Shown: in pieces, positions 4,300 through 63,840 of the stretch
Layout: every line of letters begins with the position of its first letter
Position numbering within the stretch: the stretch's first letter is position 1
NCBI GenBank assembly: GCA_950097015.1
Contig: CATNEN010000014.1
Span: 496,001 to 560,000 of the forward strand
Length of the DNA stretch: 64,000 nt
From: Macrostomum hystrix
Lineage: Eukaryota; Animalia; Platyhelminthes
Reading direction: 5' to 3'
Made by a program: the position numbers and the translations under genes
The notes under the pieces: generated by a model
What the model was told of the DNA's origin: nothing
The model's database searches: none
What the model saw: only the letters and a program-made list of their open reading frames with translations

Positions 4300-4900
4300 C
4301 AGCTTTATAAGCCAGTCCTGCTTATTGCGCGGTAGCCAACAATAATATCCCCAGACGGAGAGCAGCTAGCCTTGGAGTAAGCCGTGTGCTGTTTTTCCAT
4401 CACACTGGAAGCCTGCGCCCGCCTTGCTGGGGCAGCTCCCGTATGTTTTTGTATCCCAGGTGCAGTTTAGTGCGTTGGGCTTAGCTTATCTGGACCATCG
4501 ATCGATGGTCACATAGCTAAGTCCAGCTGTGTGTTCAGCCATTAGTGCATTAGCGCTCCAGAGAAATGGAGTTAGCCAACAATTTATATTTCCCCTAGAT
4601 TGCTAATGCATGAATATTTGGAAAGAACAGGTGCAGACTTACCCCACTTGGAATGACCTGACAGTTCCTGTTTTACTCTCAACTATTTGCACTTGCCTCT
4701 AAAAAGGCAGCATTTTCCTATAGGTCTACTCAAGTGTTCTCATATCACAATAGGTGAAATCCATGCTTCCCAGCAGGAAGGTTTTGTTTTCCAAACAGCT
4801 CATACTTAAGGATTAGCGGCTGGCATAGTGCTTCAACTGTACTTTCACTTTCATACCCCATGCAACTCAATAAATTGACGATGAAAGATGCTGTGCTGTG
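4300..4900 (-). mobile_element. Possible highly degenerate LINE reverse-transcriptase relic
   Basis: Broken minus-strand peptides reminiscent of RT motifs (KHGF, SAPVL/FQIFMH, KLSPT). Many stops; weak call. Confidence 0.25.
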
Positions 4901-39874: not shown

Positions 39875-42800
39875 CTATAGGTGTGTCGTGTCACCAGCAT
39901 CACCTTCTTCACCAGAGGCCCCCTTTGAAGCTTCATTATCGGCCCCGTCGAAGGCCTCGTTGACGTACTCCGAAGTGGTGGGCTGAGCAGAATCCAAAGC
40001 AAATCCGCCAGCCTCAGCAGCGCCGCCGGCTTCGGCAGCACCGCCAGCCGCAGCTGCAGCAAATGCCGCAGTTCCCCCAACGGCTGCAGTGCTGGGAGCC
40101 ACAACAGAGCCAGAGCTCGTCAGGACTTTGATGATCACGAAGACTGCGAGCCCAATAAAAGCGATGCCAAGGACGGGAATGACAGACACCAGAGAGTAGA
40201 AGGCGGCACCAGGAGAGTCCTGTGGACCGATGGGTGGCCTAGAGCTAGAGGTTGGAGCGACACTAGTAGTTATCGATGCTGTTGTTGTCGTCGATGTGGT
40301 TGTTGTGGTTGTCGATGCTGTTGTCGACTGCGTCGTTATGTCTGTAGTCTGGGCTGTTGTCGTTGCTGGATAGACAAGATCGTCAACGAAAGGAAGTACA
40401 TTCTCCCACCAGCCGCAGTCCTGCCTGCGGAAGCCGAAGTTCAATTCTGGGAATTTATCGATTCCGAGAGCGCGGAAATACTTGGTGCGCTTCAGTCCCA
40501 GCTCGTAGGGTCTCCAATTCGGAGCACTCGGGTTCAAGTTCGGATTTCCGTCCTTGGCGAATTTCACAAAGCGCCTCATAATTGACTCAGAGAGGTTGGC
40601 TCTATCCACAGTCTCTGCTGGACCAGGGCTTGTCGGATTGCCGAAAAAGAAGAACGCATCTTCAACTGCAAATTAGAAAATGAGGCGGCTAAGAAGGTTG
40701 CTTGATATTTATTTTGTTTTTGTCTACTTGCATGCTTAAATTTTTGTGATTTCAGAGTTTCGATTACGAATAGTTCTGGTAGAAAGAATCCAGTCGTGAC
40801 AGAAACTTACACAGTGTCGAACCCAGCAACGGCAAGCGCTCTCCTTGGAACAGGGCCATTTCGTCGAATAAATAGTAGTAGGTGGAGTTGTTTGGGCTGG
40901 CAGCAACGAACTTCTCCGCGAACTCGGTGATGTCGCAGGTGAAGTAGCGGTCGCTCAATGCTTCCGCCCACTCTTGGATCTTCAGATCAAAGCTCTCTAG
41001 GTTTGACCACGGAGACTTGAACAGTTTCAGAATCTCCTGACCGCTGGTGGTCATCTGGGTCGGGAACCTTGGGAAGAAGGTGTTCGACTCGACCAGGGCC
41101 TGAAATTATTCAAGTGATGCAGTTTTGTTCCTGAGTGCGAAAGAATCGGGGCAATCAAATTATGCGCTTCAGACCGATGTGAATAACAGCGACTCGCACC
41201 TGTCGGTATGTCTCAAGCGTGAAGTTGTCCTTGTTCAGAATAATGTCACCGACGATTCTCTCGAGAAGGAAATTTCCAGGACTGCTTGTCTGTCCAATGA
41301 TCATCGGCATCTTGGCGAATCTTCCAGAGTTGACCAGAACCCACGGATCGTCAGCGAAGAATTCGCCGTCAATAACAGGCTGGAACTCAATGCCCTTGAA
41401 GATCCGGTTAAAGTCCTCTTGCATCTCGTTGATCAACTCGGGTGTTAGACCTTGCAGACAGTTGAGTACATCTGAGCTGCAGCTCAATGACCTGACGAAC
41501 TCGGCGCTATATAGCTTCACAATGCTAGGCTGATCGCTGAGCGGATAGCTCTGCATCGGACTGCCCGTCATCATGATGACTCTCTGGAACGGCTTGCTCG
41601 CAATTGGCTCTCGGAGGAGGTGGTATCCAACGGAGATTGAGCCAGCCTCCACACCGGCCAGCGTGATGGTGTTCTTGTCGCCACCGAACGCCTCAATGTT
41701 CTTTGCCACCCAGCTGACGGCGGCCTCCTGGTCAAAGAGGCCCATGTTTCCCGTGATGCCGCTGGCTACAGAGGTTTCCAGAGCGAGGAAGCCAAAGGCT
41801 CCGAGGCGGTAGTTGATCGTGACAATCACTGCATGCTCATGATCCAGGATGTTTCGACCGTTCCAGCGAGGCTCTGACGATGTGCCGACTTCGAAGAAGC
41901 CACCATGGATGAACACAATAACCGGATACGTGCCATTCGGATTTCCTGCACTTCTTGGCGTCCAGATGTTCAGGAAAAGACAATCCTCGCTCATTGTGAT
42001 GGGAGTGTAGTACTTTCTCTGGTAGCAAGAGGCACCCATTTCCTTTGCTTGATGTGTCACTCCTATGGGGGCAGTTAAAAAATGTAGGGGTAATTAGAAC
42101 GACCCAGACATTTTTCCGAATTTCAACAAACTCACCATCTCCGGCGTTCCTCAATGGCTCCGGACGCTTGAAACGTAAGTTTCCGACTGGGGGCTCAGCG
42201 TATCGCACGCCCAAGAACTCGGACATTGTGTTGTTGTCCTGAGTCACCACAGTCTGGCCAACGACAGTTCCGAATCCGCTCACGGAAACACTGTAATCAG
42301 CAATCACATTGCCCTGGATTTTCTGTGTGATTTTAGCTGTCTGAGGAGCGTTTCCGATGGACATATCAGGCAGCGCCTTTGTGGAGTCTCGTCGGGTTTT
42401 CTGGCCGAATGACGTTCCGTTCTTCACGAGACCATCGACGTAAGGCAGGTCGTAGTACCAGACACCACATCGTTGAATAGTTTTGGCTCCCTCGGTGGCA
42501 TTGTAGCGATCGTCGTAGAGGTTGTTGTAGTCGGCGTAGTCCCACACTCCCAGCTTTGTCTTTTGCCATGTGGGATCTGCAAATATTTTGGTTTTCGCTT
42601 CGATTTTAACACCGCAGCATTGGAAGTACACCGGTTTGCGCGACCTTGGTGAGCACTGACTGGAGTTAGTGAAGGACAGGCTTTGGTGGGGTGCTTTGGT
42701 CGGTGGTTGTTGGGGTGGGGGTCGCTTGTGTGGGGTGGGTTTGGCGTGGCAGGTGGTATTTAGTTTGTCGTTGTGACCCTTTTGCGTCTCGTTTGCGCGC

Positions 42801-45800
42801 TAGGTTTTTTTGCAAAAAAACTGCATCTGCTATTTTATTTCAATTGCCATTTTCGTATTTATTCGTTAAAATTTCTGAAAATATACACTTTGATGGGGCT
42901 TGTTCTTTGCGTGCCCCTCTGCTTCATCGTCCCACGTTGTCCTGCCTTTGCCTTCAACTCAAGTTGCGGCATGTCTACCTAATTCCGGGTATTTTTGTCT
43001 TGGCCAACGACAACTAGTTTCCCTTGAGCTGATGAGTGAGCACCCAACCACTTGGTCAAAAAACACGAAGCTAAAATCACCTGATGGACAAGCTCACAAG
43101 TTATAGCTCAAGCTCATAAAAATCGGAAGCTATTTACGCTTGTACCTCAGAATTTCAACACATGCAGCATGCTGCACCTTTTCTTTATGCTTTTAGAGCG
43201 GAATGTAGAGTTTTACATGCATTTTATTAATATTTCGTCTACAGAATTTATATTTCATTCCATTCACTCCAATCCATAATGAGACACTTGTGCTACCAAA
43301 ATACTCACTCGGCTGGCCATCTCTGACGAACTTCACAATGTCCCGCATCATGCGAATCGAAAGCTTTGTGTGAGATTCCGGGTAGACAATGCCAGTACCA
43401 GCAGGAATGCCGAAAAAGTATCGGAGATCCGCTTGATGGTCTGAGCCCAGTTGTTTCCGATCGACGTCCCATGGATCTCGAGCCGTGAAAACGTACAGAT
43501 AGGTCTCCGTGCTCGGTCGGTTCCGACCCTTCTGGACGATCGACTCCCACACAGGACACAGAAAGTAGCGATCACCCACAGCCTGACCCCAGGTGTTTTG
43601 CAGAGTCTGCTTGTCAGGACTGCCGATGTAGTCATCGAAGTACAGGTGGATGAAGTCGGTGCCGGTCTCGCTCAGTTTGCGAGGGAATCGTGGATGGTAC
43701 GGGAACGTCTGGTTCAGGAACTGAAAACGGGTTTTATCAGTGTGTTTGTGATGAATAGTGCTTGTAACTAATGAAAATTTCAAGTTGCGAAAAATTTGAA
43801 TGCATCTCAGAAACAATCTAGAGCCATGTATCTCTCACCTTTTTGTAAGTCGAAGCATCAACGTCAGCAATGGTCAAGTTCTGATTCGCGAGAGCCTGAG
43901 CCACATAGCTTCCTCCAGTGTCTGTTGTGAATCCCATGAGCATTTCGGTGGTGGCTGATCCAGCCTCCTGATTTCTCCATGCTTCAATGGGGTCTCGGTT
44001 GTTGAAAAATTTTTCGTCTAGGACCGGTCGAAACTCCAACGTGAGAAGCAGCTTCAGGAATGGCGTCTGGGCGTTCACGATTGTTTGGGCATCAAGTCGC
44101 CTGATGCAAGCAATGGTTTCGGTGATGCCGGCGTTTCCACATCCAAGTGCGAGAGCGACGAATGCGAGATTCAAGTCGCGCGTGTTCTCCTTGCCTCCAT
44201 TGCTATCGTACCAAGCCATGGGCATCGTGGGGGAACCCCCCATCATGATGGCTCGCTTGAAGAGTTGTTTCGAATCGGTGATGCTATGGAATCCGACGGC
44301 AGCCGCTCCGATACCATGTCCGGCAAGCGCGATGTTCTGAGGGTCTCCTCCGAAGTGGCTAATTTGGTCACGCACCAAACCGATCGCAAGGCGCTGGTCC
44401 AGCAGGCCCATGTTGCCGGGAAGCTCTGCGTCGTTGAGGTACAGGAAGCCGAATGCTCCAAGTCGATAGGCCACAGTGACCAAGACGACATCCTCGTAGG
44501 ACAGGAGGTTTTCTCCGAATAGCTCGCGCTGACTGATGGAGCCAGATTCGAAATTCCCTCCGTGAATGTACACAATCACGGGATAGTTGCGTCCCGCCAC
44601 CGCCTCCGGTGTCCAAATGTTCATATACAGACAGTCCTCAGAGATTGGAATTCCCAGCGTGCTGTTGTCTTGTGGGCAAGCTGGCGGAAGTGTCTGAGCT
44701 ACTAGAGTTCCAGGAGCTCCGGAATATCCTCTCGGTTGTGCGAACCTAAGATTTCCGACTGGTGAATCAGCATAGGGCACTCCGAGGAATCTAGCTATGA
44801 TTTTATTGTTTCTGTCGAGTCGAACACGGTGGCCGACGACGGTAAAGTCAGGGTTGACTACCACCGTCGCATTTCCGACGACAGTACCATCCGGTCCGAT
44901 GGGGGGCCGAGTTGTTGGTTGAACTGTTGGCGGCAACGTCGTTGGATCCCTTGTCAAATTGTCCACGAAAGGGAGGATTTCATCCCAAAATCCGCACTCC
45001 TGTCGTCGGTACCCGTCGCGGTACATCCTCGGTGGCAAGTTGTCCGCATCGAGAAGCAGATGCGACTTGTTCCTGGCATCGTACTTCTCCCACCTAATCG
45101 TTCCGCCGGGCTCGCCATCGCGCGCAAAGTTCACGATCACATGCATGATTTCGTCAGACAGCTGGCGCTGCTCGTCCGGACGAGCTGGGCCCGGGCTCGA
45201 CGGATTGCCGAAGACGTAGAACGCGTCTTCAACTGAAATGAGTTTTCGAAAGTCTTGCTAATTGACGTGAGAATCAGTCTTTAAAGCCATTGTTATGGTG
45301 CTGCAACCAAGGCTAGTTGCATATATCTGCTAGACTATTCACCTCTACTCGTGAAGAGCTCGGATTACAATAAATTCCATCAAAAACCAAAAAAGTTTTT
45401 TAGTTCACCCACATAGACTGGCGTGCTTGAGTGGTAGCGCCGATTCCTCGTAGTCTTTGCCCTCGGTGAACAGGTAGTTGAAAACTGGCTGGTTTGAAGC
45501 CTTGGAGTAGGCGTCGAGGAACTTGTTGTTTGCACAGGTAAAGTAGCGGTCGCTGACAGCGAGGCCAAGGTCTCTCAAATCTCGCTCAAAGTTGCCCTGT
45601 CCGTTGTACTGCATGTAGTGGTTGCGCAGGCCAGTTCTGCCTGCGGTCGTCAACTCTGTCGGAAACCTCGGGAAGAACTCCGTCATGCGTTCCAGGGTCT
45701 GAAAATAATTTCAAGCGTTAAGAAGATACAGCAAACAATTTTAAATCCCGAAAGATTGCCCAGAGCAAAGTTAAACCTAAGCCAAAGTTCATTTGCTTAG

Positions 45801-48800
45801 TGCAGCTCTCGTATTGAAAGTTGTTATTACAAACTGGTGAACAACAGTCTTAAAGTACGTCAAAAAATTATTAGCTAGAAACGATGAAGAAACAGCGCAT
45901 TTTAAAAGGACTTTATCTGCATTCGAAAAGTCTGGCTAGCTCCCCGGCGAAAATTCAGCAGACATAAAAACCGGTCGTGAAAATTGGCATGCATTCGTCA
46001 CTCACCCGAAGATAAACGCTGTGAGTGAAATTTCTTGGGGTCAGCAGCACACCCTCCGTGGCTCGCTCAAGAAGGAAATTGCCTGGTCTGTCGACGCCTC
46101 CGAAAATCATTGGAACCTGCATCAAATTTTTAGGATCAACAGTCCACGGATCCTGAGAGATGAAGTCTCCGTCAATCATCGGTGGGAACTCAAGTCTCTG
46201 GAAAACCTGTTGGAAAACTTCCTGAGCCGCGTTGATTGTGTCTGCAGGTAAATCCCGAATACACTTTAGAACCTCAACACCTTGGCAGCGCAACCTAGTT
46301 TGAGCAAAGCTGATTTGAATGTCTCGAGCTTTCTCCACGTCATCCGTCAGCGGATAGGACATGTACGGAGATCCGGTCATGAGCACCACCTGGTGGAAGC
46401 GGTTCTGACTTGGTCGGGCCATGTGGTAGCCGATCGATACAGCACCTGCCTCAACGCCCATCAAAGTGATGCGCTGCTTGTTGCCTCCGAATCTGTCGAT
46501 GTGGTCGGCCACCCACTGGAGAGCCATCTCCTGATCCCAAAGACCGTAGTTTCCAATGACATCTTTGTTGTCGAGCGAGAGGAAGCCGAACACTCCGAGT
46601 CGGTAGTTGATTGTCACAACGACGGCGTCCTCGTGATCCAGGATCATGCTGCCGTGCCAGCGATCTTCGTTGATGCCGCCGACTTCGAAGAAGCCTCCAG
46701 GAATGAAGACAAGCACAGGAAGGTTCGAGACGTCCCTGTCGGCTCTCTTTGGCGTCCAGATGTTCAAGTAGAGGCAGTCTTCAGACATGCTCAGATTGTG
46801 GTGTTGCCTCTGGATACACATTGGGGGCATTTTCGTCGCATTGTGTATGGTGTCTGAAAAATAAATTTAAATTTAAGAAATAATGGCAGCGCTTAAGAGC
46901 GGCAAAATGTTTTAACAAAGCCTCTCAAGTATTCATTCGATCATGCTGTGAAAATTGCTCGTACGCACCGGACGTTGTCTCTGGCTTCTCTGGCTTCGCC
47001 AATCGAAGATCTCCGACAGGCGGCTTTGCAAATGGAACTCCGAGAAATTGCGACATTGTGACGTTTGAAATCGTCCTAATAGTGTGTCCGTGGACATGAC
47101 CAAAGTTTGGAATTGCAACCGAGTAGTCTGCGACTACGTCATGAACGTTGAACGTCGACGATTTCTGATGTAGTGGGCCAGCCGTCAGTTGCTGCTTTCC
47201 ATTGACGCTAGCAAGAAGCTTGAGGAATTCTTCGTCGTCGTTGGCTGTTGAAGCGGTCAGATTGTTCACAAACGGCAGTTCATTCTTCCAGAGGGGGCAG
47301 CGGCCGGTGTTCAGCCCGAATCCATCTTCGACCATGACTGACAGCACGGAGCCTGGACCACCTGAATCTTCCTGCACGACATCGTAGATGAGGAAGTCAG
47401 ATGTTTGGAAGCTGGTCTGGTTCCATCGCGCAGGTGCTGCAATGAGTTTATACATGGCATTCAGTTGCTACACATGTTTTTTAAACATGGAGATTCCAGC
47501 AAGCGAATTTATGGTTGCTTACCAGTGCCGTCCATGTACTGCACAAAGTCGTCCATCATCAGCCGGGACAGATCCTTGTGAGACTCCGGATATCCGTCTC
47601 GCCTCAACGGCTCGCCAAACAGGTAGCGAATGTCTCCCCAGTGGTCGGCTCCAACCAAGCCTTCCTGCACCCGGAATGGGTCCTCCACATCAACGTAATA
47701 CATGTGGATTGGGTGTTTCTTGGCTCTCAACAGGTCGCTTGCGGCCTCCCAGATTGGACACAGGAAGTTGAAGTCGCCCATCGCTCTCGACCAGATGGCC
47801 TTGATGCGCTCATTGTAGTCGAAGTAGTTCCACTCGGTGAGGGCCAGCTTGAGGAACTGCAGCGCTGAGGCTCGATTTCTGTCAGGAAATCTGGGGAAGT
47901 AGTTGAACTGCAGCTCCACGATCTGATAAGGAGAAGAATGATGCGAAATATTTTACTTTTAGCTTGTTAAAGAAGGTTTTGACTGTACACGCAATTCTAC
48001 AATAATGTAAGAAATAGAAGGATTTTTCTAAAAACTTTTTTCGTCTGAAGAAAACCAAATGGGAAGTTGAATTGTTAAGCCTAGGTTGCGGCACTTCTAT
48101 ACCAACAGCCACAGGCGCTGTTTGTATGGAGTTTTGCTAATGACACCTTGGGAGGTCGAGGTTGTGATGACACCTTCGTTGGTCACATCCAAAGTCGCCA
48201 TCCGAAGTTTAATCATTTTCCCATGAATGTCTATTCTGGTTTCCGGGCCTACTAGCTTACATGTTACTGAATAATATAATTGCTTAATCATTTTTGTGTG
48301 TCATATGGGTTCTTAAGAGTCTGATTTTCCATGGCGCGGGTTTGACTAGAACAGTCTGAATTTTATATGACGTAGGCATGTCTAGCTCTGGTAATATTAT
48401 AATTTCACTTCTTTCTCTTTGGCAAAATCATATTCATAATGAAACAAACAGGAGAGAAAAGAGATGCAGTTTCACAAGCGACAAAATCCTAAGCTCTGTG
48501 ACTAATTTAATCTATTATGCATTTTAACCCAAGAATAAAAATATAATCACCTTCCTTACGAAACATATAAATACAAGTACTCTCATTCGCAAGATATCCG
48601 TGGTCGGAAATCAGAACATGGCTGCATATAATGTCCAACTCACCCTCTCAAAGATGGTCCTGTTGAGCGACTCCCACGAGATGTTGCGTCTCGCCAGCGA
48701 CTGCTCGATGTAGTACCGTCCTGAGTCTGAGCCCACTCCAGTCATGATCGGCTTATCCATTTCGCCACTAGCCCAAACATCATAGGGGGGAGTATTGTTG

Positions 48801-54800: not shown

Positions 54801-57800
54801 GCGCCTGGCACCTTGAGTTCTTCCGGAAGCCTTGGGTTGTAGAAGGAAGCGTTCACGATATTCTGAAATATTACGATGTGACTGTCTCAACTCGGCAAAG
54901 AAAAAAATATAGTGAAACACTGACAATGTTATTTGTAGTATCTAATTATTTTACCTCAAGGACTTCGTCGTAGGAGATATTCAGTAGGTCCATCTCGCCG
55001 AGTCTGACCCTGCGCTTAATAATTTCATTGCCAGGTCTATCGACGAAGCCGATAATCATAGGCACCTGGTTCATGTGACCTTTTTGCACTGATATCCAAG
55101 GGTCCTCCTTGAGAAAGTCTTCATCGATTGTTACCAGAGCCTCCGGACCGAACCTGTTAGCGAACTGGTTTGTGTAGACTTCGCGAATCTCCTCTTTGGT
55201 CTTGTTTCGCATGCAGGCGAGCCGCGCACTATTTAATCCTGAATCACAGCCCATCAGCCGTAGAAACTGCTGGACGCGCATTTGCGAGCTTTGGCTATCA
55301 TTAGTCAGAGGATAAGCCATTGAGGGACTGCCAGTCTGAAGAATGGCTCTGGCAATTCGTGTTTCATTTCGAATCAAGTGGTAGCCGATGGAAACAGCGC
55401 CTGCGTCATCTCCAACGGCGGTAATAAGGCTGGCATTTCCACCAAAGTTGTGAATATGCTCCTCAACCCACTTTATCGCCATCTCTTGATCAAAGAGTCC
55501 GAAATTTCCTCGGTTTCCATCGCTTGAAAATGGTAGGAAGCCCAGAGCCCCCAGACGATAGCCGACAGTTACCACGACAACGTCCTGCAGCTCGACTATC
55601 TTTTGGCCGCTTCTTGCTGGTTCCTGAATTCCTCCTACTTCAAAAAAGCCACCGTGAATATAGACAAGAACTGGGACTTGTGTACCGTTCGTTAGACGAG
55701 GCCTTGGGGTCCAAATGTTCAGGTACAGGCAGTCCTCGCTCTCTTCTAAGTTTCCGCCATATGCTTGAGGACAAACTTTTGGCATTTCTAGTGCCAAGAT
55801 TTCCTCTGAAAAAAATAAATTATATGATACACATTTTTAGGGCTGTACATATATTAAAGTCCAAGCTCAAATCGTAATCGATGAATATTTCCTTACTGTT
55901 ATTGATAGGATACATCGATGGTTTTTCGAATCGCTTGTCATTGATTGGGGGCTCGGCATAGGGAACCCCCAGGAAGCGCTCCATCTGAACACCGCTTTCG
56001 TTGACCTTCAGAAGGTTTCCGACGATTTTTGCATTGACGTCAGGTAGATCTATCGTCACATTGCTAACGATTTCCTCAGTGGTGGGTATCCTGAGGCTCT
56101 TGGCAGCTTTCTTCTCTTCCTTGGCTCGGTGGCTGTCATCGGGAATAGTACCATCCAACAAGAACGGATCCCTAGGCAGCGGGATCTTTACTCTTGTTGA
56201 GTCTCCAGGTACCAATCGATTCACGTAACTGAGTGTGTCGAACCACCAGCGGCAGCGACGAATCGCGAAGCCGCCAGTTAAGTTGTAGAGGCCTGGATCG
56301 TCGACCGGGCGGTAGTCGTTGAAGTTCCAATCTCCGGCGATTACGCTTGGCCAGTGTTGGTCTGTTGGTCGCAATAAGATAGCTTTGTTATTGCCCTTTT
56401 CTGCCGGAATTCTTACTTAAAAGTATAAGCTAGCCGATTTGTCTACAGGACAGGAAAAATGCGGATTAAATAGAAAAAAGTTTTCAACATTTATTTTTCT
56501 AGAAGGGCGATGCTCAGAAATTGATTTCTTACGCGAAATCAATTCTCGTATTTGAATAGGGTATGTAATTTATTCTTTCAGAGTAAGACAACGAAGCTGT
56601 TTAGCCGCCCGTTTTTACCAATAGGGAATTTCCCCTCTGTTATATTTTGGTAGCGCCTAAATCCTAATAGCGTTGGCAGGTGACTGATTGGTTGGCAGAC
56701 TAGGCAATGGTGTACTGTGGTTGAGCTGCGCCTAATATTTTGGCTTGATCAGGAAATTTGGAGAAATTCGCGTCGGGGTGTCCATAGTGGCCTATTTCCA
56801 CTAGTTTTAGTAGCACTTGAAGGTCCAGCGAATCCGTCTAGATGAAGGTAGGTGACCACCAAAGACGAAGATGATGCAGGTACATTCGGTTAACATGCTG
56901 ATACATTTCGAAGGCCTTGCAAGGTCACGCTGAGGCGCAGTGTTAATTTGTGTATCTTGGTGCATGAAACGCACTAGCGCTTATGGGAAAAATCCTACTT
57001 CCGGGCCAGAAGCATTGAATATCCCGATGGTCTGAAGAGCTGGCGACTTGATTCTTTTTTCAGAAGATGGTAAAGAAAAAGTTGGCCCGTGTTTTTGAGT
57101 TTCGTTTTTTGCGTTGCTCCGTTCGGATGAAGCTCAAAAAATTGTCACGGGGGGTAAATTCCCCCCATGGTAAATCAGAAGACGAATCATTTGTCATAGA
57201 CGATTTGAAATAGAGCAAAAGGTTGCCAAACTGTATCCATCAATTCCAAATGCAGTTTTTTAACTAACCTACACATAGCCTAGTTTGTCATAAGTACATC
57301 AAGCACATTAAGCACATTAACCTCTTCCGTACCGAGACTTTTTACTGCACTCCGTGAAAATCTGTATGGTCAGCATGGCTGACCATAGACTTTTTCATCC
57401 TTGGCGTGTGGTCTTGCTTCACTCCATGAAAATCCGAAGCGAACTCTATGCAGTTCTTGCGCATCGGTTTTTTATTCCTTAGACGAATGGGTGGGTGGCT
57501 GTAACGCAATGCGTCTATGTCCTAAACCTTCCAACCCTATATATGTACAGTAAGCTGTTGGCGCAGTACAGCTTGATGCCGTACTTGGCACGCTTCGTTG
57601 CGATGTACTGCTTGAAGCGCAGTCGCCCCTTGTACAGCACCACTGGCTCCTCCTCCGGCCTGTAGACATTCATGCACAGATGTCTCAAGGTATGCAGCAA
57701 AGGTCGAATCTTAAACAACGAATCGCCAAGAGCCAGATCCTCGGTGCAATCGCAAAAGCGAAAGCAGACCGAGCAGCTGCTTGAACAGATCCCTGCAGAG

Positions 57801-60800
57801 CGCTTCAGGGATTTGAAAGAATGGTGTTGAATAGTAGCTGTCCATACATCAGTACTGGTTCATCTCGGCTTTTTGTTGCTGCCCATTTAGAGGTACATCC
57901 CAATTAACTTCATCACTTTATTCGCACCACAATCAGTCCGTTTTCGAAAAATCACAGCTAGGTCATCAGCAGGCGTTGCATGGATTACGGCCCAAGGCTC
58001 TTCGGTTAGTCCATTCAAACATTAGTCTTCAAACAAAGAGTCGGGGAGATAGAGACAAAGAAAAAAAGAAGTGAACTGCTCAACATCACCGGGAACTTCG
58101 ATTCCAGGATTAAGTCCTGGTGTGCCTAGAAATTCAGTTTCACTTTCGGAAACGTCAATCCCAGCGATAGCAGGACGCCATGGCATCTCAACGCCCGCTT
58201 CTTCATTGCCTGTGTCCATGACATCAGACGCCTCCTCCAAGATGACTAAGTCCTCATCATCTGACGTCATTAGCTCATCCATTCGCTTATTTTCTTTGTG
58301 ACGTTACTGAAAATGTCGCTGCTGTCTAATAAATGGTGGCTGAAGTTAGCTTGTTTACACTAAGCTTGTTTACACTACTCTTAGGTCAAGACCCTAGGAT
58401 GTTACAGTGACATACATGACTTCTTTATGTACTCGTACATTCGTTAGTTTGAAGCATACACAGCTGAAATCCGAGATTTTTCAGTTATCACTTATGGCCT
58501 CACAGTTATCAAGCCCGCTTTGCAGAAGCTATTTAACTCAATCCTTAGGCTTGGATGTACTCCTAAACAATGGTCACTAGCATTAATAAGCCCAATCTAC
58601 AAGAAGGGGTCTCGCAGTGATCCAAAAACTACAGACGAATAAGCGTCCTGCCAGCCATCGCGAGACTGTTTGCATCAATTATTTACGAGAAATTAGAAGC
58701 ACACATCAAAGCCCTGAACTCACTATCGGCTAGTCAAATAGGAAGCAGAAAAAGTTGCCGGACTTCTGATCACATCGCAACCCTATTGACATTAATTCAT
58801 AAAAATAAGAAGTATAGACCTTTCTATCTCGTTTTCTTTGATTTAAAAAGCGCCTTTGACATGGTTCACCAGCCAACCCTAGTCACACGATTAAAGCAGT
58901 TGGGCGTGAACCCAGCAATAATAAGTATTATTGAGATTATGTACTCAAGCGCGAAATTTTACCTCATGGTTTCAGAAAGCAACCATGAAGCGTGTCAAAT
59001 TACTAATGGTGTCAGACAAGGATGCCCCTATCTCCACTGCTATTCTCCCGATGCATCGACCCGCTAAGCACAATTCTAAAAAACTCATTTCAAAGCCATA
59101 CCTCCATATTGAATGAAGAAGTAAACAACCTGCTTTATTGTGACGATTTAGTCATTTTTGGTGAAGACCTGACAGAATTACAAAAAAGCCTCTACAAAAT
59201 AGCAGACTTTTGCAATACTCATAAATTAGAAATAAACATTCAGAAGACAAAGCTTCTGAGCTGCAATCTCCACTCAAGGGCAACACATAGACTGTTTTTA
59301 CCAAGGACCACTAGTAGACTACTTGAGTAGTCCGTGGTTTTTACATGGTCAACTTGTTGAACCCGTACGACAGTGGAAATATCTTTGGTTTCACATGAAC
59401 GTGAAGGGAACAGTAGATACTCATGCCATAGTACCAGGTAAAAAAGTGGACATCCAATAATGCTTCTGAGAAAGTTGGCAGGATTTCAGAGAGCAACACT
59501 AACAGCTCATCTTGTTTAGCACAACTTTGATTGAAAGCATAGTTCTCTATGCATCAGAGGCCTGGGGAGCTTTTGTCTCCTGGAAACTGGGTACTTGGGA
59601 TCGGAACCTTATAGAGAGAATTAATTTTAGAATCTGCAAGTCGATTCTGCAAGTTAGTCCAAACACTGACAGCAATGGTGCTCGGTCCGGTTAGGAAGAC
59701 TACCACTATTATAAAGTATCCAAAAAGAAGCCGTCAATACTGGTCCTCAGTTCGGAGCCGACCAGACTCCATCATCGCGAAATGTGTGGCAGATTACAGA
59801 ATACATCGATGTTGGCATTGGGGAAAAATTAATAGTGAAGTAATGCGGAATTGTCAACTGACTAGAAAAACAAAGTCCATCAAAACGCACAGAGAGAATT
59901 TTGAGTCAGAGTTTCGAAGGCACTGGACTCAGAGGATGGGAAAATCAGCCAAGCTCAGCCACTTCTATTACACGTTTAAGAAAGATTTCTCCCGAGAAAA
60001 GTACCTAACAATAATCTCTAACCCAGAAAAAAGGCGCACAATGTCCCGATTTCGTCTAGGAAACCACAAACTGGCCTGTGAGACATTGCGCACTGTAAGA
60101 CCGAAAATCGCCTATGAAAACAGAACATGCCCAAAATGTAGAGTCGAGGTAGAGAACGAAAATCATATTCTCTTTAGATGCGGTTGGTCCGTTTATGTTC
60201 CAATTAGAAATAAATCCATAGAGAAAGTGGCAGGCACAGTTCGAAATTTCGAAAGCCTAACAGCTGATGACAAAATGGTGTATTTAATGACACAAGGAAA
60301 GCACAGAACTAACAGAAAGTTTTGTGAACTTCATAGAAAGCAAACTTAAAGCTAGATAAAAAAGCCACTGCCCTGAGGCCCATAGTTAGAATGCTTGATT
60401 ATAATTTGAGTTTTAGTTTTCTTATATTTGATCGTAACTTGCAAAAACAAAATAGCTATTCTCCTTTCGGGATTGAAGTGATTTCAGTCACAGTTTTAAT
60501 TTTATCTTTAAATTTCTATATTTCATTTTTTTGTTGTAATGCCTTTGTTTACAAATTTCAAATATTTTATTTACCTAAAATTAAAATTACTATTATGAAT
60601 GCTACTGTTTTTCTTTCACCTTTTTAAATCGAATTGTTCAGCCTTGTTACCAACATCAAATAAACAAAAAATCTGTACCCAATCGGCATGCGCACTTTAA
60701 TAATAATAATAATTATTATTATTATTACAATATCTCTCAAGCGTTTTTTGTTCATTCCGAAATTGTAGTCAAATGCACTGTCTATGCTTCCTGCAAAAAC

Positions 60801-63800
60801 AGGAGTTGTCTGTGTTAAGTGCTGCTTACGCTTAAGTGCTGATATGTTGCACAAACTAGACCAGTTCGGAAGAGGTAGTCTAAACTAAGGTCTGCTATTA
60901 TCAGAGCTCTTGCTTTTTGGGGTCTCAGTCAGTTAGTACAATAGCAGGTGCAATATAACGATCGTAATTAGAGGTCAGGATTAGGGGTCAGGAAAAGAGG
61001 ACCTGCATCCCGAGACTTCAAATTTGCAAGACCACAGCACTAACTAGTCAAACACTTTAAGTTAGTAGGGAAAGATTTTGCAAAGCGATAACAAAGTTGC
61101 TAACTGCTATCTACGTTGGATCAGATTATCTCAGAGGCAGATGCGGTGCGAGTGGGGCGGAGGAATGTGAAGAGAGACCTATTAAGGGGAGTTAACGTCT
61201 GTTAAGCACCTAAGAGTTGCAACTGCAGCTGCGCTATGTGGCCTCACCGCAGAATCGAGCTCGTGGACATTGGGGTGAGAAGCAAATGCGTTAGACCCCT
61301 ATGGCACTCACCCCAGCAACCCATACAAAAAATGTTGCCCATCGCAGATTTTCAGCTTTACTGATTCTGTCGATGGCTCTAGCAACTCGTGAATGCTTGT
61401 AAGCGTTGGGTGATCAACTCTACATATTTCATTAAAGCACTTATGCTCTTCAGAACTACCATTACTTTCAGAATTACCTTTACAGTAGCGCTTATCTGTT
61501 TGCAAAAACTTTATGTTACACTTCGCATTGTGAAATAAATTTCAATAAGCCAAATTGAAATCAACCAGTTTTGTAACTTCTATACCCTTGAATTTAATTT
61601 AATAATCTGCATGACAGATCCTGCCTATGCAACTGTGAATATGCTACTGAGCCACGAGTTATCCAGTAGATATTATACCCAGATCTTAAGCCTAGACCAG
61701 AGGAATTCATAATAATGCGCCCAGTGAGGGGTTTCGGTGCAATAATCAACAGATTCCAGCTTACTGGGCACTCCGTTGGTGACGAAGTTCGCCAGGTCCG
61801 CCATCATGCGTTTCGACAGATTGTTGTGCGCATCCGGGAATGCGGGTCCCGGTCCGTCTGGCACGCCCAGGAAGTAGCGGACGTCGTTCACGTGACCAGG
61901 CGCCGCGTCCTCTCTGAACGGATCCGGGGCGCCGAAATAGTACAAGAAGCTTTTCATGTCCTCGCCAGGCTTCGGCCTGTCGTCGTCAAATAGTGCGTAC
62001 AGTGTCGGGCAAAGGTAGCTGAAGTCGCCCAGCGCTTCGGCCCACTTCTTCAGCAGCAGCTGCTTGTTCTCAGCATCGTTCCATTCCGTGTGCGACAGCT
62101 GGAGAAACTTCATACCCGTGTCGTCTACCCGCGTCGGGAAGCGAGGATGGAATGGGAACTGCAGACGCAGGATCTGGATTAGAAAGTGGGTTTGCAGAAT
62201 GAGATTCGCTATAAATATGAAAGTTTGAATGTACGAGCTAGTATTTAAAAAGTTTAAATGGAAGTTAATATTGTAGAAGTTTTGCAAAAACAGCTTGAGA
62301 GAATTCAAAGCCTCTATACGAGTGTTTTGTGCATTCGCTAATTAATGAGGGAAATTTAAGAAAACTTGTTCAAATTACTATTTTTTTACTTTTTCCTCAC
62401 CGATTTTCATTAAAAGTTTCTTAATTACTTAAAAAACTTGTCTGATAAGAACTCGGATCGAATGCTCCAAGCGTATAAAAGGTTCAGTAACTGGTCTTAC
62501 TAATGATAATTATCTTATATACTGCAAAAAAACGCAGTAAAATGGTGCAATTGAACGCGCAAGATAAACGCTATAGTTTCCACATGTTCTTACATTCAGG
62601 TTAAGTTTTTTGCCTACAACCAAAGAATATTACGAGCTTAAAACCTTCAACTAGGACCGAAACCTTAGTTCTGTTTGACATTTCTTCAATGCCAAAAGTA
62701 TAGCAGCTTTATTTACGAAGCGCCACTCACTTCGTAGTACACGGTGCGGTTCATGATATCGATGGTCAGGTTCCTCGAGTTGAGCGAGTTCAGAGCAAAC
62801 TCGATGCCCGAATCGGCCGTGACACCCATCAGGATGGTGACGTTCTTGCGACGCTCGCCCCAGCTGATGAGAGGGTCCAGATAGTTGAAGAACTCTCGGT
62901 CCAGCACCGGCATAAACTCAAGGGTGGTGTAAAGCTTTTCATAGTTCTTCTGCTCCTCGATGAGCTTCTCAATCGAAACATCTTTCCTGACGCAGTCGAT
63001 CACCTCGGCCAGCTTACCGTCGCCTTTTGCACAGTCGAGCTGGATGTTCACAAACCGCTCGCTGATTTCTCTCACTGCGTTGATGTCGTTGGACCAGGCC
63101 AGGGGCATGAAGTGCGAGCCGCCCATCATCACTGCACGGGTCAGGGGAATGGAGCCAGCAGCAATGTGGAACCCGACGGACGCTGAGCCTGTGCCGTGAC
63201 CAGCCAGAGTGATTTTGTCCCGGTCTCCACCGAATGATCCAATCAGCTCTGTAATAGTCCTTAACGCCAGGCGTTGGTCCAGCAGACCGAAGTTTCCAGG
63301 CATCTCATTCGGGTCGAGATAAAGGAATCCAGTGACTCCGAGTCGGTAGTTGATGGTCACGAACACAATGTCCTGGTTTCGCAGTAGCGTCTCGCCCTGG
63401 TTCTCGGGCTCAGCAATGCCGCCAGTCTCAAAGCGGCCGCCATGTATGTAGACGAGAACAGGATACTTTGCACCGCCTGTGGTGTTAGGGGACCAGATGT
63501 TCATGTACAAGCAGTCTTCGCTGTAGGGTAGGCTCTTCGTGGAGTTGTCCTGGGGACACAGCGGTGGCTGATGCGTGGCGTCAATTGTGACGTCCTCAGC
63601 ATAACTCAGCGGGCTGGGCCTAGCGAAACGGCGATCGCCAGTTGGTGGCTGAGCGTAAGGGACTTTGAGAAATCTGTTGATCTCTTTCCACTCGGTTTGG
63701 GAAGTGACATTCACACGATGGCCATTGAACTTGTAGCCATCATGGGTCACCTGAACAGGTCCGATGACTGAGTCGGCATTGAAGCCGGCAGTCAGAGCCA

Positions 63801-63840
63801 GTAGCAGGACTGCTACTAGCGTGATTTTTAGCGGCCTCAT
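39875..63840 (-). CDS. Gene A: giant eight-domain tandem non-catalytic carboxylesterase/cholinesterase-like (neuroligin-like) type I membrane protein, ~4681 aa; exons 63840-62731, 62173-61765, 56400-55897, 55805-54955, 54862-54580, 54488-53149, 53063-52661, 52417-51953, 51841-50994, 50774-50486, 49995-48644, 47922-47523, 47436-46969, 46853-46006, 45698-45413, 45232-43839, 43720-43309, 42576-42136, 42062-41200, 41099-40811, 40665-39875
   Basis: Signal peptide MRPLKITLVAVLLLALTAGFNA. Eight COesterase motif sets, and no internal signal peptide or stop. Each ORF ends or starts at a GT/AG site, phases match at all 20 introns, and the total (14046 nt) is divisible by 3. Ser/Thr stalk, TM and tail ..DTTHL*. 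Confidence 0.8.
40390..42330 (-). other. Gene A domain 8 (type B)
   Basis: GVEAG elbow, HGGFF, GQTSSPG (acid lost), STLFEDAF (His lost). Confidence 0.85.
42480..44890 (-). other. Gene A domain 7 (type A)
   Basis: GHGIG elbow, HGGNF, GSDHQADLRY. Confidence 0.85.
44960..47150 (-). other. Gene A domain 6 (type B)
   Basis: GVEAG elbow, PGGFF, HASLFEDAFY. Confidence 0.85.
47270..49670 (-). other. Gene A domain 5 (type A)
   Basis: GHGTD elbow, HGGNY, GADHWGDIRY. Confidence 0.85.
49740..52140 (-). other. Gene A domain 4 (type B)
   Basis: GVEAG elbow, PGGFF, HASLFEDAFY. Confidence 0.85.
52260..54170 (-). other. Gene A domain 3 (type A)
   Basis: GHGTD elbow, HGGNY, GADHWGDIRY. Confidence 0.85.
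54230..56070 (-). other. Gene A domain 2 (type B)
   Basis: GDDAG elbow, HGGFF, GAGLSEDTFY. Confidence 0.85.
56600..57180. mobile_element. MITE-like element with imperfect TIRs containing a single monomer of the 60-bp satellite
   Basis: Left end tttttaccaatagggaatttcccctc and right end ggggtaaattccccccatggtaaat are imperfect inverted repeats. Internal gactgattggttggcagactaggcaatggtgtactgtgg..gcgcctaatattttgg. Confidence 0.6.
57317..58400 (-). mobile_element. Degenerate piggyBac (PGBD-like) DNA transposon
   Basis: Minus-strand EEPVVLYKGRLRFKQYIATKRAKYGIKLYC (piggyBac DESMxxFKGR..KYGIK motif) and N-terminal FLGTPGL..FTSFF. TTAA|CCTCTTCCG end at 57317. Frameshifts and stops. Confidence 0.85.
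58545..60400 (+). mobile_element. 5'-truncated, frameshifted non-LTR retrotransposon (LINE, CR1/L2-like) reverse transcriptase
   Basis: ISPIYKKGSRSDPK..YRRISVL, FFDLKSAFDMV, GVRQGCP/LSPLLF, LLYCDDLV, LEINIQKTK, and C-terminal RTCPKC..ENENHILFRC across several frames. Confidence 0.92.

What the first reader, a model, noticed from the sequence alone, without database searches (positions are those of the whole stretch)
39875..63840. Giant poly-pseudoesterase membrane protein: eight cholinesterase-like domains in one ~4,680-aa chain
Seen in sequence: 21 exons join in frame via canonical GT-AG sites into one ORF with signal peptide, 8 COesterase domains, Ser/Thr stalk, TM and short tail. There is no internal signal peptide or stop. 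Established: cholinesterase-like adhesion molecules (neuroligin, gliotactin, neurotactin, glutactin) carry ONE such domain. Inference: this is a beads-on-a-string surface receptor, adhesion or glycocalyx protein that an ORF-level annotation would miscall as a cluster of separate esterases. I know of no described family with this architecture.
Basis: partly seen in the sequence, partly recalled or inferred. Interest (0 to 1): 0.92.

Follow-up and report, generated by a model that had tools for sequence, protein, structure and literature searches.

The report
Eight-domain dead-esterase membrane protein gene
One flatworm (Macrostomum-type) gene, confirmed by spliced RNA, encodes a 4,668-residue membrane protein made of eight acetylcholinesterase-like domains that have all lost their catalytic residues; relatives are in databases but none appears to have been studied.

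Summary
On the minus strand, 63840-39875, 21 exons with GT..AG introns join into one 14,007-nt ORF of 4,668 aa. It has a signal peptide, 8 COesterase (PF00135) domains, a Thr/Ser-rich stalk, one TM helix and an 83-aa tail ending TTHL.

Spliced RNA contigs from two studies show 14 junctions directly and two through loose ends that match exactly. A paralogue-diagnostic contig supports one more. Three rest on paralogy, phase and length arithmetic. The only correction is the exon 3 acceptor, 56361 rather than 56400.

All eight domains lack the nucleophile Ser (Gly in odd domains, Asp/Glu in even ones) and the acidic residue. Even domains also lack His. All keep the three cholinesterase disulfide pairs.

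Domains alternate between two types, (A-B)x4, with five introns per unit in phases 0-1-1-0-1. This fits growth by exon-set duplication. dN/dS between units is 0.21.

The novelty claim is overstated. M. lignano has uncharacterised 2-, 6- and (partial model) 8-domain relatives in UniProt and GenBank. Multi-ChE-like membrane proteins are also predicted in Styela, echinoderms, hemichordates and Lineus. I found no paper describing them.

The most likely function is non-catalytic: a neuroligin/gliotactin-like surface adhesion or spacer protein. That function is inferred, not shown.

The scan had already noted a 4-domain paralogue in this window. I confirmed it.

The parts
62731..63840 (-). Exon 1: ATG at 63840, signal peptide (aa 1-23, 63840-63772), N-terminal two thirds of domain D1 (type A)
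   Evidence: ORF and Pfam COesterase 8e-77. Hydrophobic segment at aa 8-26. The N-terminus is conserved in M. lignano P0155. The donor is at the position paralogous to RNA-proven J6 and J16, phase 0.
61765..62173 (-). Exon 2: C-terminal part of D1 (retains the His position)
   Evidence: Pfam profile positions 358-486. The donor at 61765 is proven by a contig loose end at 56361 that matches 61765-61794 exactly.
56362..61764 (-). Intron 2 (5,403 nt), enlarged by transposon remnants
   Evidence: GT..AG ends. piggyBac-type DDE_Tnp_1_7 fragment at 57518-57859(-) and RVT_1 fragment at 59022-59330(+).
55897..56361 (-). Exon 3: end of D1, 50-aa A-to-B linker, start of D2 (type B)
   Evidence: A 3,681-nt contig in X6 (3,625 nt in X7) with 0 mismatches. 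Junction 55897/55805 is a CT..AC skip.
54955..55805 (-). Exon 4: core of D2 (nucleophile position = Asp)
   Evidence: Pfam 3e-66, RNA junctions on both sides, motif alignment.
54580..54862 (-). Exon 5: D2 C-terminal part
   Evidence: RNA junctions 54955/54862 and 54580/54488.
53149..54488 (-). Exon 6: end of D2, Pro-rich PPIGPEG linker, core of D3 (type A, nucleophile = Gly)
   Evidence: Pfam 3e-89 with two stretches, RNA junctions.
52661..53063 (-). Exon 7: D3 C-terminal part
   Evidence: RNA junctions 53149/53063 and 52661/52417.
51953..52417 (-). Exon 8: end of D3, linker, start of D4 (type B)
   Evidence: ORF across the linker. RNA junction at about 51953/51841.
50994..51841 (-). Exon 9: core of D4 (nucleophile = Glu)
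   Evidence: Pfam 1e-75. RNA junction 50994/50774 in X1, X6 and X7.
50486..50774 (-). Exon 10: D4 C-terminal part
   Evidence: RNA. The loose end at 50486 in four runs equals 49966-49995 exactly and differs from the exon 16 start.
48644..49995 (-). Exon 11: end of D4, RPPIGPDG linker, core of D5 (type A)
   Evidence: Pfam 4e-83. The acceptor is proven by the loose end. The donor rests on paralogy with J6 and J16, phase 0.
47523..47922 (-). Exon 12: D5 C-terminal part
   Evidence: Pfam. The junctions rest on paralogy and phase only. The length of X1's 5,288-nt contig implies it reaches into this exon.
46969..47436 (-). Exon 13: end of D5, linker, start of D6 (type B)
   Evidence: ORF across the linker. 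A spliced 679-nt contig carries D5/D6-copy letters at 11 of 15 variant sites.
46006..46853 (-). Exon 14: core of D6 (nucleophile = Glu)
   Evidence: Pfam 2e-72. RNA junction 46006/45698 in four runs.
45413..45698 (-). Exon 15: D6 C-terminal part
   Evidence: RNA junctions.
43839..45232 (-). Exon 16: end of D6, RPPIGPDG linker, core of D7 (type A, Ser200 equivalent = Gly, Glu327 equivalent = Thr)
   Evidence: Pfam 9e-90, residue-by-residue alignment to Torpedo AChE, RNA.
43309..43720 (-). Exon 17: D7 C-terminal part
   Evidence: RNA junctions 43839/43720 and 43309/42576.
42136..42576 (-). Exon 18: end of D7, linker, start of D8 (type B)
   Evidence: RNA, Pfam.
41200..42062 (-). Exon 19: core of D8 (nucleophile = Glu)
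   Evidence: Pfam 2e-71, RNA.
40811..41099 (-). Exon 20: D8 C-terminal part
   Evidence: RNA junctions 41200/41099 and 40811/40665.
39875..40665 (-). Exon 21: end of D8, Thr/Ser stalk (40372-40208), TM helix (40207-40127), 83-aa Ala/Gly/acidic tail ending TTHL (40126-39878), stop codon at 39877-39875
   Evidence: ORF, hydropathy peak 2.78, coordinates. By length arithmetic, X7's 4,807-nt contig runs to about 39920.

Best explanation
This is one gene for a giant type I membrane glycoprotein.

Shown here:
- One transcript and one ORF encode a signal peptide and eight acetylcholinesterase-fold domains. These are followed by a mucin-like Thr/Ser stalk, a single TM helix and an 83-residue cytoplasmic tail.
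- All eight domains are catalytically dead. The nucleophile Ser is replaced by Gly (D1, 3, 5, 7) or Asp/Glu (D2, 4, 6, 8). The acidic triad residue is replaced by Ser, Thr or Pro. His is kept only in the odd domains.
- The three structural disulfide pairs of cholinesterases are kept in every domain.
- The chain is four A-B units. Each unit ends in a short Pro-rich 'PPIGP' linker, and the same motif precedes the TM helix.
- Each unit has the same five intron positions, in phases 0-1-1-0-1.

Inferred from these facts: the gene grew from a 2-domain ancestor (SP-A-B-stalk-TM, still present in M. lignano) by tandem duplication of phase-compatible exon sets, with later gene conversion between repeats.

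Inferred function: it acts by binding rather than catalysis, as a cell-surface adhesion, receptor or spacer molecule. This is the manner of the single-domain cholinesterase-like adhesion molecules (neuroligin, gliotactin). The conserved C-terminal T-x-L would serve as a possible PDZ-type anchor. Each A-B pair may pack as a semi-rigid module, giving four beads on a Pro-rich string.

My confidence is about 0.9 for the architecture, about 0.95 for catalytic inactivity and about 0.45 for the adhesion/receptor mechanism.
For: - Eight PF00135 matches, with ORFs running through every linker.
- A 21-exon GT..AG model without internal stops.
- Spliced contigs: 3,681 nt covering D1 to D3, and 4,513-4,807 nt covering mid-D6 through D8 into the last exon (to about 39920 by length arithmetic). 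Both have 0 mismatches in X6-X8. An independent study (X1) shows the same junctions.
- Loose ends prove the D1/D2 and D4/D5 joins.
- Only two hydrophobic segments are found, and there is no furin-type site in any linker.
- Triad columns read GSH DPL GSH EPL GSH EPL GTH EPL, against SEH in 64 single-domain relatives. The Torpedo AChE alignment shows Ser200 to Gly and Glu327 to Thr in D7.
- Each domain has 6 Cys and there are 60 N-x-S/T sequons.
- The AF2 model of the orthologous A-B pair has mean pLDDT 81, and each domain matches AChE at TM 0.85.
- pTM is 0.68 for A-B and 0.56 for B-A at equal pLDDT. This is a weak hint that A-B is the packed unit.
- A-to-B linkers are 40-50 aa. B-to-A linkers are 18-26 aa with a PPIGP motif.
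- dN/dS between the D3D4 and D5D6 units is 0.21.
- The M. lignano relative keeps the same dead-triad pattern, the TM helix, the tail motif E(Y/V)VNEA(F/Y) and a C-terminal S/T-T-x-L.
- In the domain tree the A and B types are two starred sister clades. They include the 2-domain M. lignano protein.
Against: - There is no functional, localisation or protein-level evidence, and no binding partner is known.
- No single read or contig spans all 14 kb, because contigs break at the near-identical repeats. An isoform that skips units cannot be excluded.
- J1, J11 and J12 were not seen directly in RNA.
- The PDZ-ligand reading rests on three terminal residues.
- The pTM difference is small, and no PAE or coordinates were available.
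- The domains are closer in sequence to acetylcholinesterases than to neuroligins: the 60 PDB matches shown, of 158, are all AChE, BChE or carboxylic ester hydrolases. The analogy to neuroligin is therefore one of topology, not orthology.
Confidence: 0.6

Rival explanations
1. It is a passive glycocalyx or barrier protein. In this reading the long, heavily glycosylated, membrane-tethered (possibly shed) rod has only a steric, lubricating or protective role. It would act like a membrane mucin, with no specific ligand and no signalling.
For: The ectodomain has 60 N-glycosylation sequons and a Thr/Ser stalk, and it is net acidic (533 D+E against 416 K+R). The neighbouring paralogue has expanded its stalk to 23 copies of a 9-aa TTTRDPTAP repeat, as mucins do. 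The number of units differs between paralogues (2, 4, 6, 8). This suggests that length itself is the variable under selection.
Against: Folded 60-kDa domains under purifying selection (dN/dS 0.21) are an expensive way to build a spacer. Two distinct, conserved domain types alternate strictly. The cytoplasmic tail motifs and the terminal T-x-L are conserved between species. Both points suggest specific interactions.
Confidence: 0.25
2. It is a non-catalytic ligand sponge or carrier. The relic active-site gorges would bind small molecules (choline esters, lipids, xenobiotics) stoichiometrically at the cell surface, eight sites per chain.
For: The fold is closest to acetylcholinesterase (E = 1e-53, TM 0.85). 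The GG of the oxyanion-hole motif is kept, and His is kept in the odd domains.
Against: Neither the nucleophile nor the acidic residue survives in any domain, and the third oxyanion Gly is replaced. Nothing here tests whether a gorge is still open.
Confidence: 0.1
3. It is not one protein. It is either a tandem cluster of separate esterase genes wrongly joined, or a decaying, non-functional repeat array.
For: Such false fusions do occur in public gene models. The Lineus 4-domain model carries a signal peptide before each domain. The Branchiostoma 8-domain model has an internal KDEL followed by a new signal peptide.
Against: Every linker lies inside an exon, and there is no internal signal peptide or stop. 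Spliced contigs cross the domain boundaries D1/D2/D3, D3/D4, D4/D5 and D6/D7/D8. dN/dS is 0.21, all 48 Cys are kept, and a relative exists in M. lignano.
Confidence: 0.03

Closest known systems
Macrostomum lignano predicted proteins: UniProt A0A1I8G704 (3,380 aa), GenBank BOX15_Mlig018316g1 (3,558 aa), BOX15_Mlig025559g3 / PAA79323.1 (1,232 aa)
   Same: They belong to the same subfamily and the same A/B clades in the tree. A0A1I8G704 is 74-78% identical to this protein. They share the dead-triad pattern, TM helix, tail motifs and C-terminal T-x-L.
   Different: They are uncharacterised automatic predictions. A0A1I8G704 is a partial model with exons missing and no TM. The GenBank entry has 6 domains, and the third entry has only one A-B unit. 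The window's gene comes from a related but different genome or copy, and it is the only complete RNA-supported 8-domain form that I examined.
Neuroligins (and Drosophila gliotactin), the cholinesterase-like adhesion molecules
   Same: Both are type I membrane proteins. Shown here for this protein: ChE-fold ectodomains without the nucleophile Ser (Gly in the odd domains), a Ser/Thr-rich stalk, a single TM helix and a C-terminal S/T-x-hydrophobic motif. That neuroligins share the Gly substitution, an O-glycosylated stalk and a tail ending in a class I PDZ ligand is from my own knowledge. PMC5943944 supports only that these proteins lack a functional triad and have one ChE-like domain.
   Different: Those proteins have one ChE-like domain and dimerise between chains through a four-helix bundle (PMC5943944). 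This one has eight domains in a single chain. There is no orthology: all 60 PDB matches shown are AChE, BChE or carboxylic ester hydrolases, with no neuroligin among them. The domains form their own Macrostomum clade. No partner of the neurexin kind is known.
Thyroglobulin
   Same: It is a very large secretory-pathway protein that uses an inactive ChE-like domain non-catalytically, as an intramolecular chaperone and dimerisation module (PMC12992692, PMC5943944).
   Different: It has one ChEL domain at the C-terminus of a Tg1/2/3 repeat protein, it is secreted and it has no TM helix. It appears only as a weak hit (E = 4e-43 against 0 for the true relatives).
Predicted multi-ChE-like membrane proteins of other phyla: Styela clava XP_077968891.1 (4 domains); Lytechinus, Diadema, Acanthaster, Saccoglossus, Glandiceps and Lineus (2 domains)
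   Same: The layout is the same: signal peptide, tandem ChE-like domains without internal signal peptides, Ser/Thr stalk, TM helix and short tail. Several end in S/T-x-hydrophobic.
   Different: They fall in separate clades, so the tandem layout probably arose independently. Many of their domains still have an intact Ser-acid-His triad, for example Styela with SDH x3 plus GEH. They have at most 4 domains. All are uncharacterised.
Predicted amphioxus poly-carboxylesterase (Branchiostoma lanceolatum XP_066292865.1)
   Same: Many COesterase domains sit in one chain, joined by very short linkers.
   Different: All of its domains keep an intact SEH triad and the protein ends in KDEL, so it would be an ER-resident enzyme rather than a membrane pseudo-enzyme. 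The 8-domain model is a fusion of a 6-domain gene and a 2-domain gene.

Membership tests
Carboxylesterase type B / cholinesterase fold (Pfam PF00135) | Significant match to the COesterase profile over the whole domain | tested here: met
   There are eight matches. The piecewise Pfam E-values go down to 9e-90. In my own domain HMM each domain covers profile positions 5-554 with 616-687 bits.
Carboxylesterase type B / cholinesterase fold (Pfam PF00135) | The three conserved intradomain disulfide pairs of cholinesterases | tested here: met
   Each domain has exactly 6 Cys, at the aligned positions P.C.Q/SEDC, L.C...C.R and F.C/C.FW.
Carboxylesterase type B / cholinesterase fold (Pfam PF00135) | AChE-like three-dimensional fold | tested here: met
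   The AF2 model of the orthologous A-B pair (mean pLDDT 81) matches human and mouse AChE with TM 0.85 normalised to the target.
Active carboxyl/cholinesterases | Ser-Glu/Asp-His catalytic triad | tested here: not met
   The triad columns read GSH, DPL, GSH, EPL, GSH, EPL, GTH, EPL. Sixty-four single-domain relatives in the same alignment read SEH. The Torpedo AChE alignment shows Ser200 to Gly.
Cholinesterase-like adhesion molecules (neuroligin, gliotactin, neurotactin, glutactin) | ChE-like extracellular domain without a functional triad | tested here: met
   The family definition is taken from PMC5943944.
Cholinesterase-like adhesion molecules (neuroligin, gliotactin, neurotactin, glutactin) | Membrane anchoring with the ChE-like part outside the cell | tested here: met
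   The scan finds an N-terminal hydrophobic signal and a single C-terminal TM segment (hydropathy 2.78). This is a crude Kyte-Doolittle scan; SignalP and TMHMM were not available.
Cholinesterase-like adhesion molecules (neuroligin, gliotactin, neurotactin, glutactin) | A single ChE-like domain per chain | tested here: not met
   There are eight domains per chain.
Cholinesterase-like adhesion molecules (neuroligin, gliotactin, neurotactin, glutactin) | Demonstrated cell adhesion or partner binding | not testable with these tools
   This needs cell-aggregation, pull-down or knock-down experiments.
Neuroligin (orthology) | Closest relatives are neuroligins, and the neurexin-binding surface is present | tested here: inconclusive
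   The 60 PDB sequence matches shown, of 158, are all AChE, BChE or carboxylic ester hydrolases, with no neuroligin among them. The domains form a clade of their own. Neuroligin sequences were not placed in the tree, and the neurexin-binding surface was not examined.
Macrostomum (A-B)n poly-pseudoesterase subfamily (defined here) | Alternating A and B domain types with the GSH/GTH and DPL/EPL triad relics, a PPIGP linker after each B domain, a TM helix, and a tail ending S/T-T-x-L | tested here: met
   The tree clades have 98-99% SH-aLRT support. Triad patterns are, linkers and tails. The tail and terminal motif were checked only in the giant, its 4-domain neighbour and the 6-domain M. lignano protein; the 2-domain M. 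lignano proteins have different tails.

The most novel reading that the evidence does not exclude
The A-B pair may be an intramolecular copy of the canonical cholinesterase/neuroligin dimer, with two diverged dead domains locked together through the four-helix bundle. Macrostomum would then have amplified this pseudo-dimer module by exon-set duplication into a graded family of rods with 1, 2, 3 and 4 modules. These rods would set intercellular or cell-to-surface distance and bind a still unknown partner. That would be a new class of cell-surface receptor built entirely from pseudo-enzyme domains.
Probability: 0.2. Interest if true: 0.75.

Novelty: new variant of a known kind. Interest (0 to 1): 0.6.

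Why it matters
Non-catalytic cholinesterase-like domains are known as single modules in neuroligins, gliotactin, neurotactin, glutactin and thyroglobulin. Here eight of them, of two alternating kinds, form almost the whole ectodomain of a protein with a peptide mass above 500 kDa, and the mRNA evidence is good.

- It gives a clean example of how a pseudo-enzyme domain pair can be amplified by duplication of phase-compatible exon sets and then homogenised by gene conversion.
- It defines a small length-graded family (2, 4, 6 and 8 domains) in a tractable model genus. M. lignano has RNAi, in situ hybridisation and transgenesis, so function can be tested directly.
- It draws attention to unstudied multi-ChE-like membrane proteins in tunicates, echinoderms, hemichordates and nemerteans.
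- It shows that some public 'poly-esterase' gene models are false fusions while others are real. Each has to be checked for internal signal peptides and retention signals.

Tried and rejected
- Separate tandem genes: rejected, because the linkers lie inside exons, there are no internal signal peptides, and spliced contigs cross the domain boundaries.
- A 6-domain isoform joining D4 directly to D7: not seen. The loose end at 50486 matches the exon 11 start, not the exon 16 start. It cannot be excluded as a minor form.
- RNA contigs coming from the 98.7%-identical neighbouring paralogue rather than from this gene: rejected. The X6-X8 contigs match this locus with 0 mismatches. The paralogue differs by 91 mismatches in 7.6 kb.
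- Polyprotein processing: there is no R-x-K/R-R site in any linker.
- Alternative catalysis by the Asp/Glu at the nucleophile position of B domains: rejected, because those domains also lack the acid and the His.
- Deep orthology of the di-domain unit across phyla: not supported. The Macrostomum A and B types are sister clades, separate from the ambulacrarian d1 and d2 clades.
- Literature: six searches found no description of proteins with several cholinesterase-like domains. Johnson & Moore 2012 could not be opened.
- A words search of the scan's earlier notes found nothing.
- The read laying cap left exons 11-13 (46620-50400) and exons 1-2 without directly laid reads.
- The AF2 output gave no PAE or coordinates, so the A-B interface geometry could not be inspected.

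Full report
**What is there**

The window is eukaryotic DNA. On the minus strand between 63840 and 39875 the six-frame ORF list shows a series of open segments. Pfam assigns every one of them to the carboxylesterase/cholinesterase family PF00135.

The pattern of matches is informative. Eight segments begin a COesterase profile. Seven segments carry the end of one profile match and the beginning of the next. The inter-domain linkers therefore lie inside exons, while the introns lie inside the domains. That alone makes a set of separate genes unlikely.

**Gene model and RNA evidence**

I enumerated frame-compatible GT/AG pairs and then used public RNA data. One search found runs holding this sequence. 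Contigs of four runs were laid on 50400-56399 and on 40620-46619.

- X6-X8 (one study) match the window with 0 mismatches. X1 and X3 (another study) differ by 1-2%.
- Fourteen introns appear as clean CT..AC skips, which are GT..AG on the minus strand.
- A 3,681-nt contig runs from D1 through D2 into D3.
- A 4,513-4,807-nt contig runs from the middle of D6 through D7 and D8 into the last exon. By its length, X7's copy reaches about 39920.
- Two loose ends settle the joins that left the laid stretch. The letters beyond 56361 equal 61765-61794 exactly. The letters beyond 50486 equal 49966-49995 exactly, and they differ from the paralogous start of exon 16. D1 is therefore joined to D2 across a 5.4-kb intron, and D4 is joined to D5.
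- A spliced 679-nt contig carries, at 11 of 15 variant sites, the letters of the D5/D6 copy. This supports the exon 13/14 junction.

The final model has 21 exons, all with GT..AG introns, a 14,007-nt CDS and 4,668 aa with no internal stop. Junctions J1, J11 and J12 were not seen directly. They lie at exactly the positions and phases of RNA-proven paralogous junctions. The contig lengths also fit them: 1,549 nt upstream of 56361 equals exon 2 plus exon 1 plus 30 nt.

The fourth needs acceptor 56361 instead of 56400, which accounts for 4,668 versus about 4,680 aa.

**The protein**

A hydropathy scan finds only two hydrophobic segments, residues 8-26 (signal peptide) and 4566-4584 (TM). Between them lie eight domains of about 530 residues.

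After D8 comes a 55-residue stalk rich in Thr and Ser, then the TM helix. The 83-residue tail is rich in Ala, Gly and acidic residues and ends in TTHL. Each domain has exactly six Cys at the positions of the three cholinesterase disulfides. The ectodomain has 60 N-x-S/T sequons. No furin-type site lies in any linker.

**Catalytic residues**

I aligned the eight domains with canonical single-domain relatives and applied a domain HMM to all retrieved proteins.

| Triad position | Odd domains (D1, 3, 5, 7) | Even domains (D2, 4, 6, 8) |
|---|---|---|
| Nucleophile (Ser in active enzymes) | Gly | Asp in D2, Glu in D4, D6, D8 |
| Acidic residue | Ser or Thr | Pro |
| His | kept | Leu |

The phmmer alignment to Torpedo acetylcholinesterase shows directly that Ser200 is Gly and Glu327 is Thr in D7. 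In the same alignment 64 single-domain relatives read Ser-Glu-His. All eight domains are therefore pseudo-enzymes.

An AlphaFold2 model of the orthologous first two domains has mean pLDDT 81. Each domain matches human and mouse AChE with TM 0.85.

**Internal structure and origin**

Pairwise identities and a maximum-likelihood tree separate two domain types. Type A comprises D1, 3, 5 and 7; type B comprises D2, 4, 6 and 8. Identity is about 40% within a type and about 30% between types.

- A-to-B linkers are 40-50 residues.
- B-to-A linkers are 18-26 residues, Pro-rich, and contain PPIGP(D/E)G. The same RPPIGP motif sits just before the TM helix.
- Every A-B unit has five introns at the same positions, in phases 0-1-1-0-1.
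- The block from one phase-1 intron to the next, five exons long, can therefore be duplicated in frame.

The D3D4 and D5D6 units are 86% and 79% identical in protein. Their overall dN/dS is 0.21. dS ranges from 0.02 to saturation along the unit, which points to an older duplication patched by gene conversion.

In AF2 the A-B pair gave pTM 0.68 and the B-A pair 0.56, at equal pLDDT. This is a weak hint that A-B is the packed module. No PAE or coordinates were available, so it stays a hint.

**Relatives**

A full HMMER scan of 1.8 billion representatives puts multi-domain proteins at the top.

The nearest relative is Macrostomum lignano UniProt A0A1I8G704. It is 74-78% identical and colinear but lacks several exons, so it is a partial model of an 8-domain gene. 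The window therefore comes from a Macrostomum-type flatworm that is not identical to that entry.

M. lignano also has two other relevant GenBank proteins:
- A 3,558-aa protein with six complete domains, the same dead-triad pattern, a stalk, a TM helix, the tail motif E(Y/V)VNEA(F/Y) and a C-terminal STDL.
- A 1,232-aa protein with a single A-B unit plus a TM helix.

In the tree all these domains form one clade, split into an A clade and a B clade (98-99% SH-aLRT). The di-domain thus arose in this lineage and was then amplified.

Multi-ChE-like proteins occur elsewhere too, but in other clades:
- Styela clava has a 4-domain type I membrane protein, with three intact triads and one dead one.
- Sea urchins, starfish, acorn worms and Lineus have 2-domain type I membrane proteins. 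Their first and second domains are orthologous across species.
- Amphioxus has a chain of active esterase domains ending in KDEL.

Some public models are false fusions. The Lineus 4-domain model has a signal peptide before each domain. The amphioxus 8-domain model contains an internal KDEL followed by a new signal peptide, so it is a 6-domain gene joined to a 2-domain gene.

**Literature**

Six full-text searches found no description of proteins with several cholinesterase-like domains. A structural review lists the non-catalytic members as neuroligin, glutactin, gliotactin, neurotactin and the thyroglobulin ChEL domain, each with one domain. It describes their dimerisation through a four-helix bundle (PMC5943944).

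A 2026 paper cites Johnson & Moore 2012 for duplication and rearrangement of ChE-domain genes in invertebrate deuterostomes (PMC12992692). As I recall that abstract, it mentions multidomain proteins made of multiple carboxylesterase domains. I could not open it, so this is memory and not a result.

**Interpretation**

The architecture and the catalytic inactivity are shown. The function is inferred. A signal peptide, glycosylated disulfide-bonded dead domains, a mucin-like stalk, one TM helix and a conserved tail ending in S/T-x-L reproduce the layout of neuroligin and gliotactin, eight-fold.

The most likely mechanism is therefore non-catalytic binding at the cell surface: adhesion, reception or spacing. 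The tail may be held by a PDZ protein, and four semi-rigid A-B modules may be spaced by Pro-rich hinges.

A purely steric glycocalyx role is the main rival. It is favoured by the graded unit number and by the expanded stalk repeat of the neighbouring paralogue. A small-molecule sponge is a further rival. Separate genes, or a decaying array, are essentially excluded.

**Neighbourhood**

A second gene lies at 13588-24392 on the same strand. The scan had noted it earlier.

- It has four domains corresponding to D5-D8.
- It has its own signal-peptide exon.
- It is 98.7% identical to 40331-47939 over 7.6 kb, introns included.
- It has a 23-copy 27-bp repeat that lengthens the stalk.
- Its TM helix and tail are almost identical to those of the giant gene and also end in TTHL.

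Intron 2 of the giant gene is large because it holds piggyBac-type and reverse-transcriptase remnants.

**Verdict**

Novelty is moderate: a new, RNA-verified, extreme variant of the cholinesterase-like membrane proteins. It belongs to a Macrostomum subfamily that already exists in databases as uncharacterised predictions.

Noticed in passing
window 13588-24392 (minus strand): A four-domain paralogue of the giant gene. It has its own signal-peptide exon (23154-24392), domains equivalent to D5-D8, and a TM helix and tail almost identical to the giant's, also ending in TTHL. It is 98.7% identical in DNA to 40331-47939 over 7.6 kb, introns included. That indicates a very recent segmental duplication or gene conversion.
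   Followed up: partly
window 14068-14687: A 27-bp unit repeated 23 times at 96% match. It encodes TTTRDPTAP repeats that lengthen the paralogue's mucin-like stalk about five-fold compared with the giant gene.
   Followed up: partly
window 56362-61764 (intron 2 of the giant gene): Transposon remnants explain the 5.4-kb intron. There is a piggyBac-type DDE_Tnp_1_7 fragment at 57518-57859(-) and an RVT_1 reverse-transcriptase fragment at 59022-59330(+). A 224-aa ORF follows at 59675-60349(+), with only faint zinc-finger and MADF hits.
   Followed up: partly
window 48644-54488 (units D3D4 and D5D6): Synonymous divergence between the two duplicated units is mosaic. dS is 0.02 over aa 1276-1416 but saturated elsewhere, which suggests patches of gene conversion between repeats within the gene.
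   Followed up: partly
window 53306-53985 (RNA contigs of X1, X6, X7): 683-nt contigs carry 8-12 differences and small indels. Only 2 of the 14 differences match the D5 copy, so they fit neither the D3 nor the D5 copy. Further expressed copies or alleles of this family probably exist outside the window.
   Followed up: no
window 28158-29003 (minus) and 2765-3748 (plus): Two unrelated ORFs. One has a CXXC zinc-finger match (8e-08). The other has a weak BCCIP match (2e-06).
   Followed up: no
public proteins P0002 (Lineus longissimus XP_064631732.1) and P0158 (Branchiostoma lanceolatum XP_066292865.1): Both 'poly-esterase' gene models are at least partly false fusions. The Lineus model has an identical signal-peptide-like segment before each of its four domains. 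The amphioxus model has an internal KDEL followed by a new signal peptide, so it is a 6-domain gene joined to a 2-domain gene. The 6-domain amphioxus chain of active esterases ending in KDEL looks real and is itself unusual.
   Followed up: partly
run X5 (sediment metatranscriptome): An environmental sediment metatranscriptome holds 16% of the sampled words of 53131-56374. This fits a meiofaunal organism that expresses the gene in the field.
   Followed up: no
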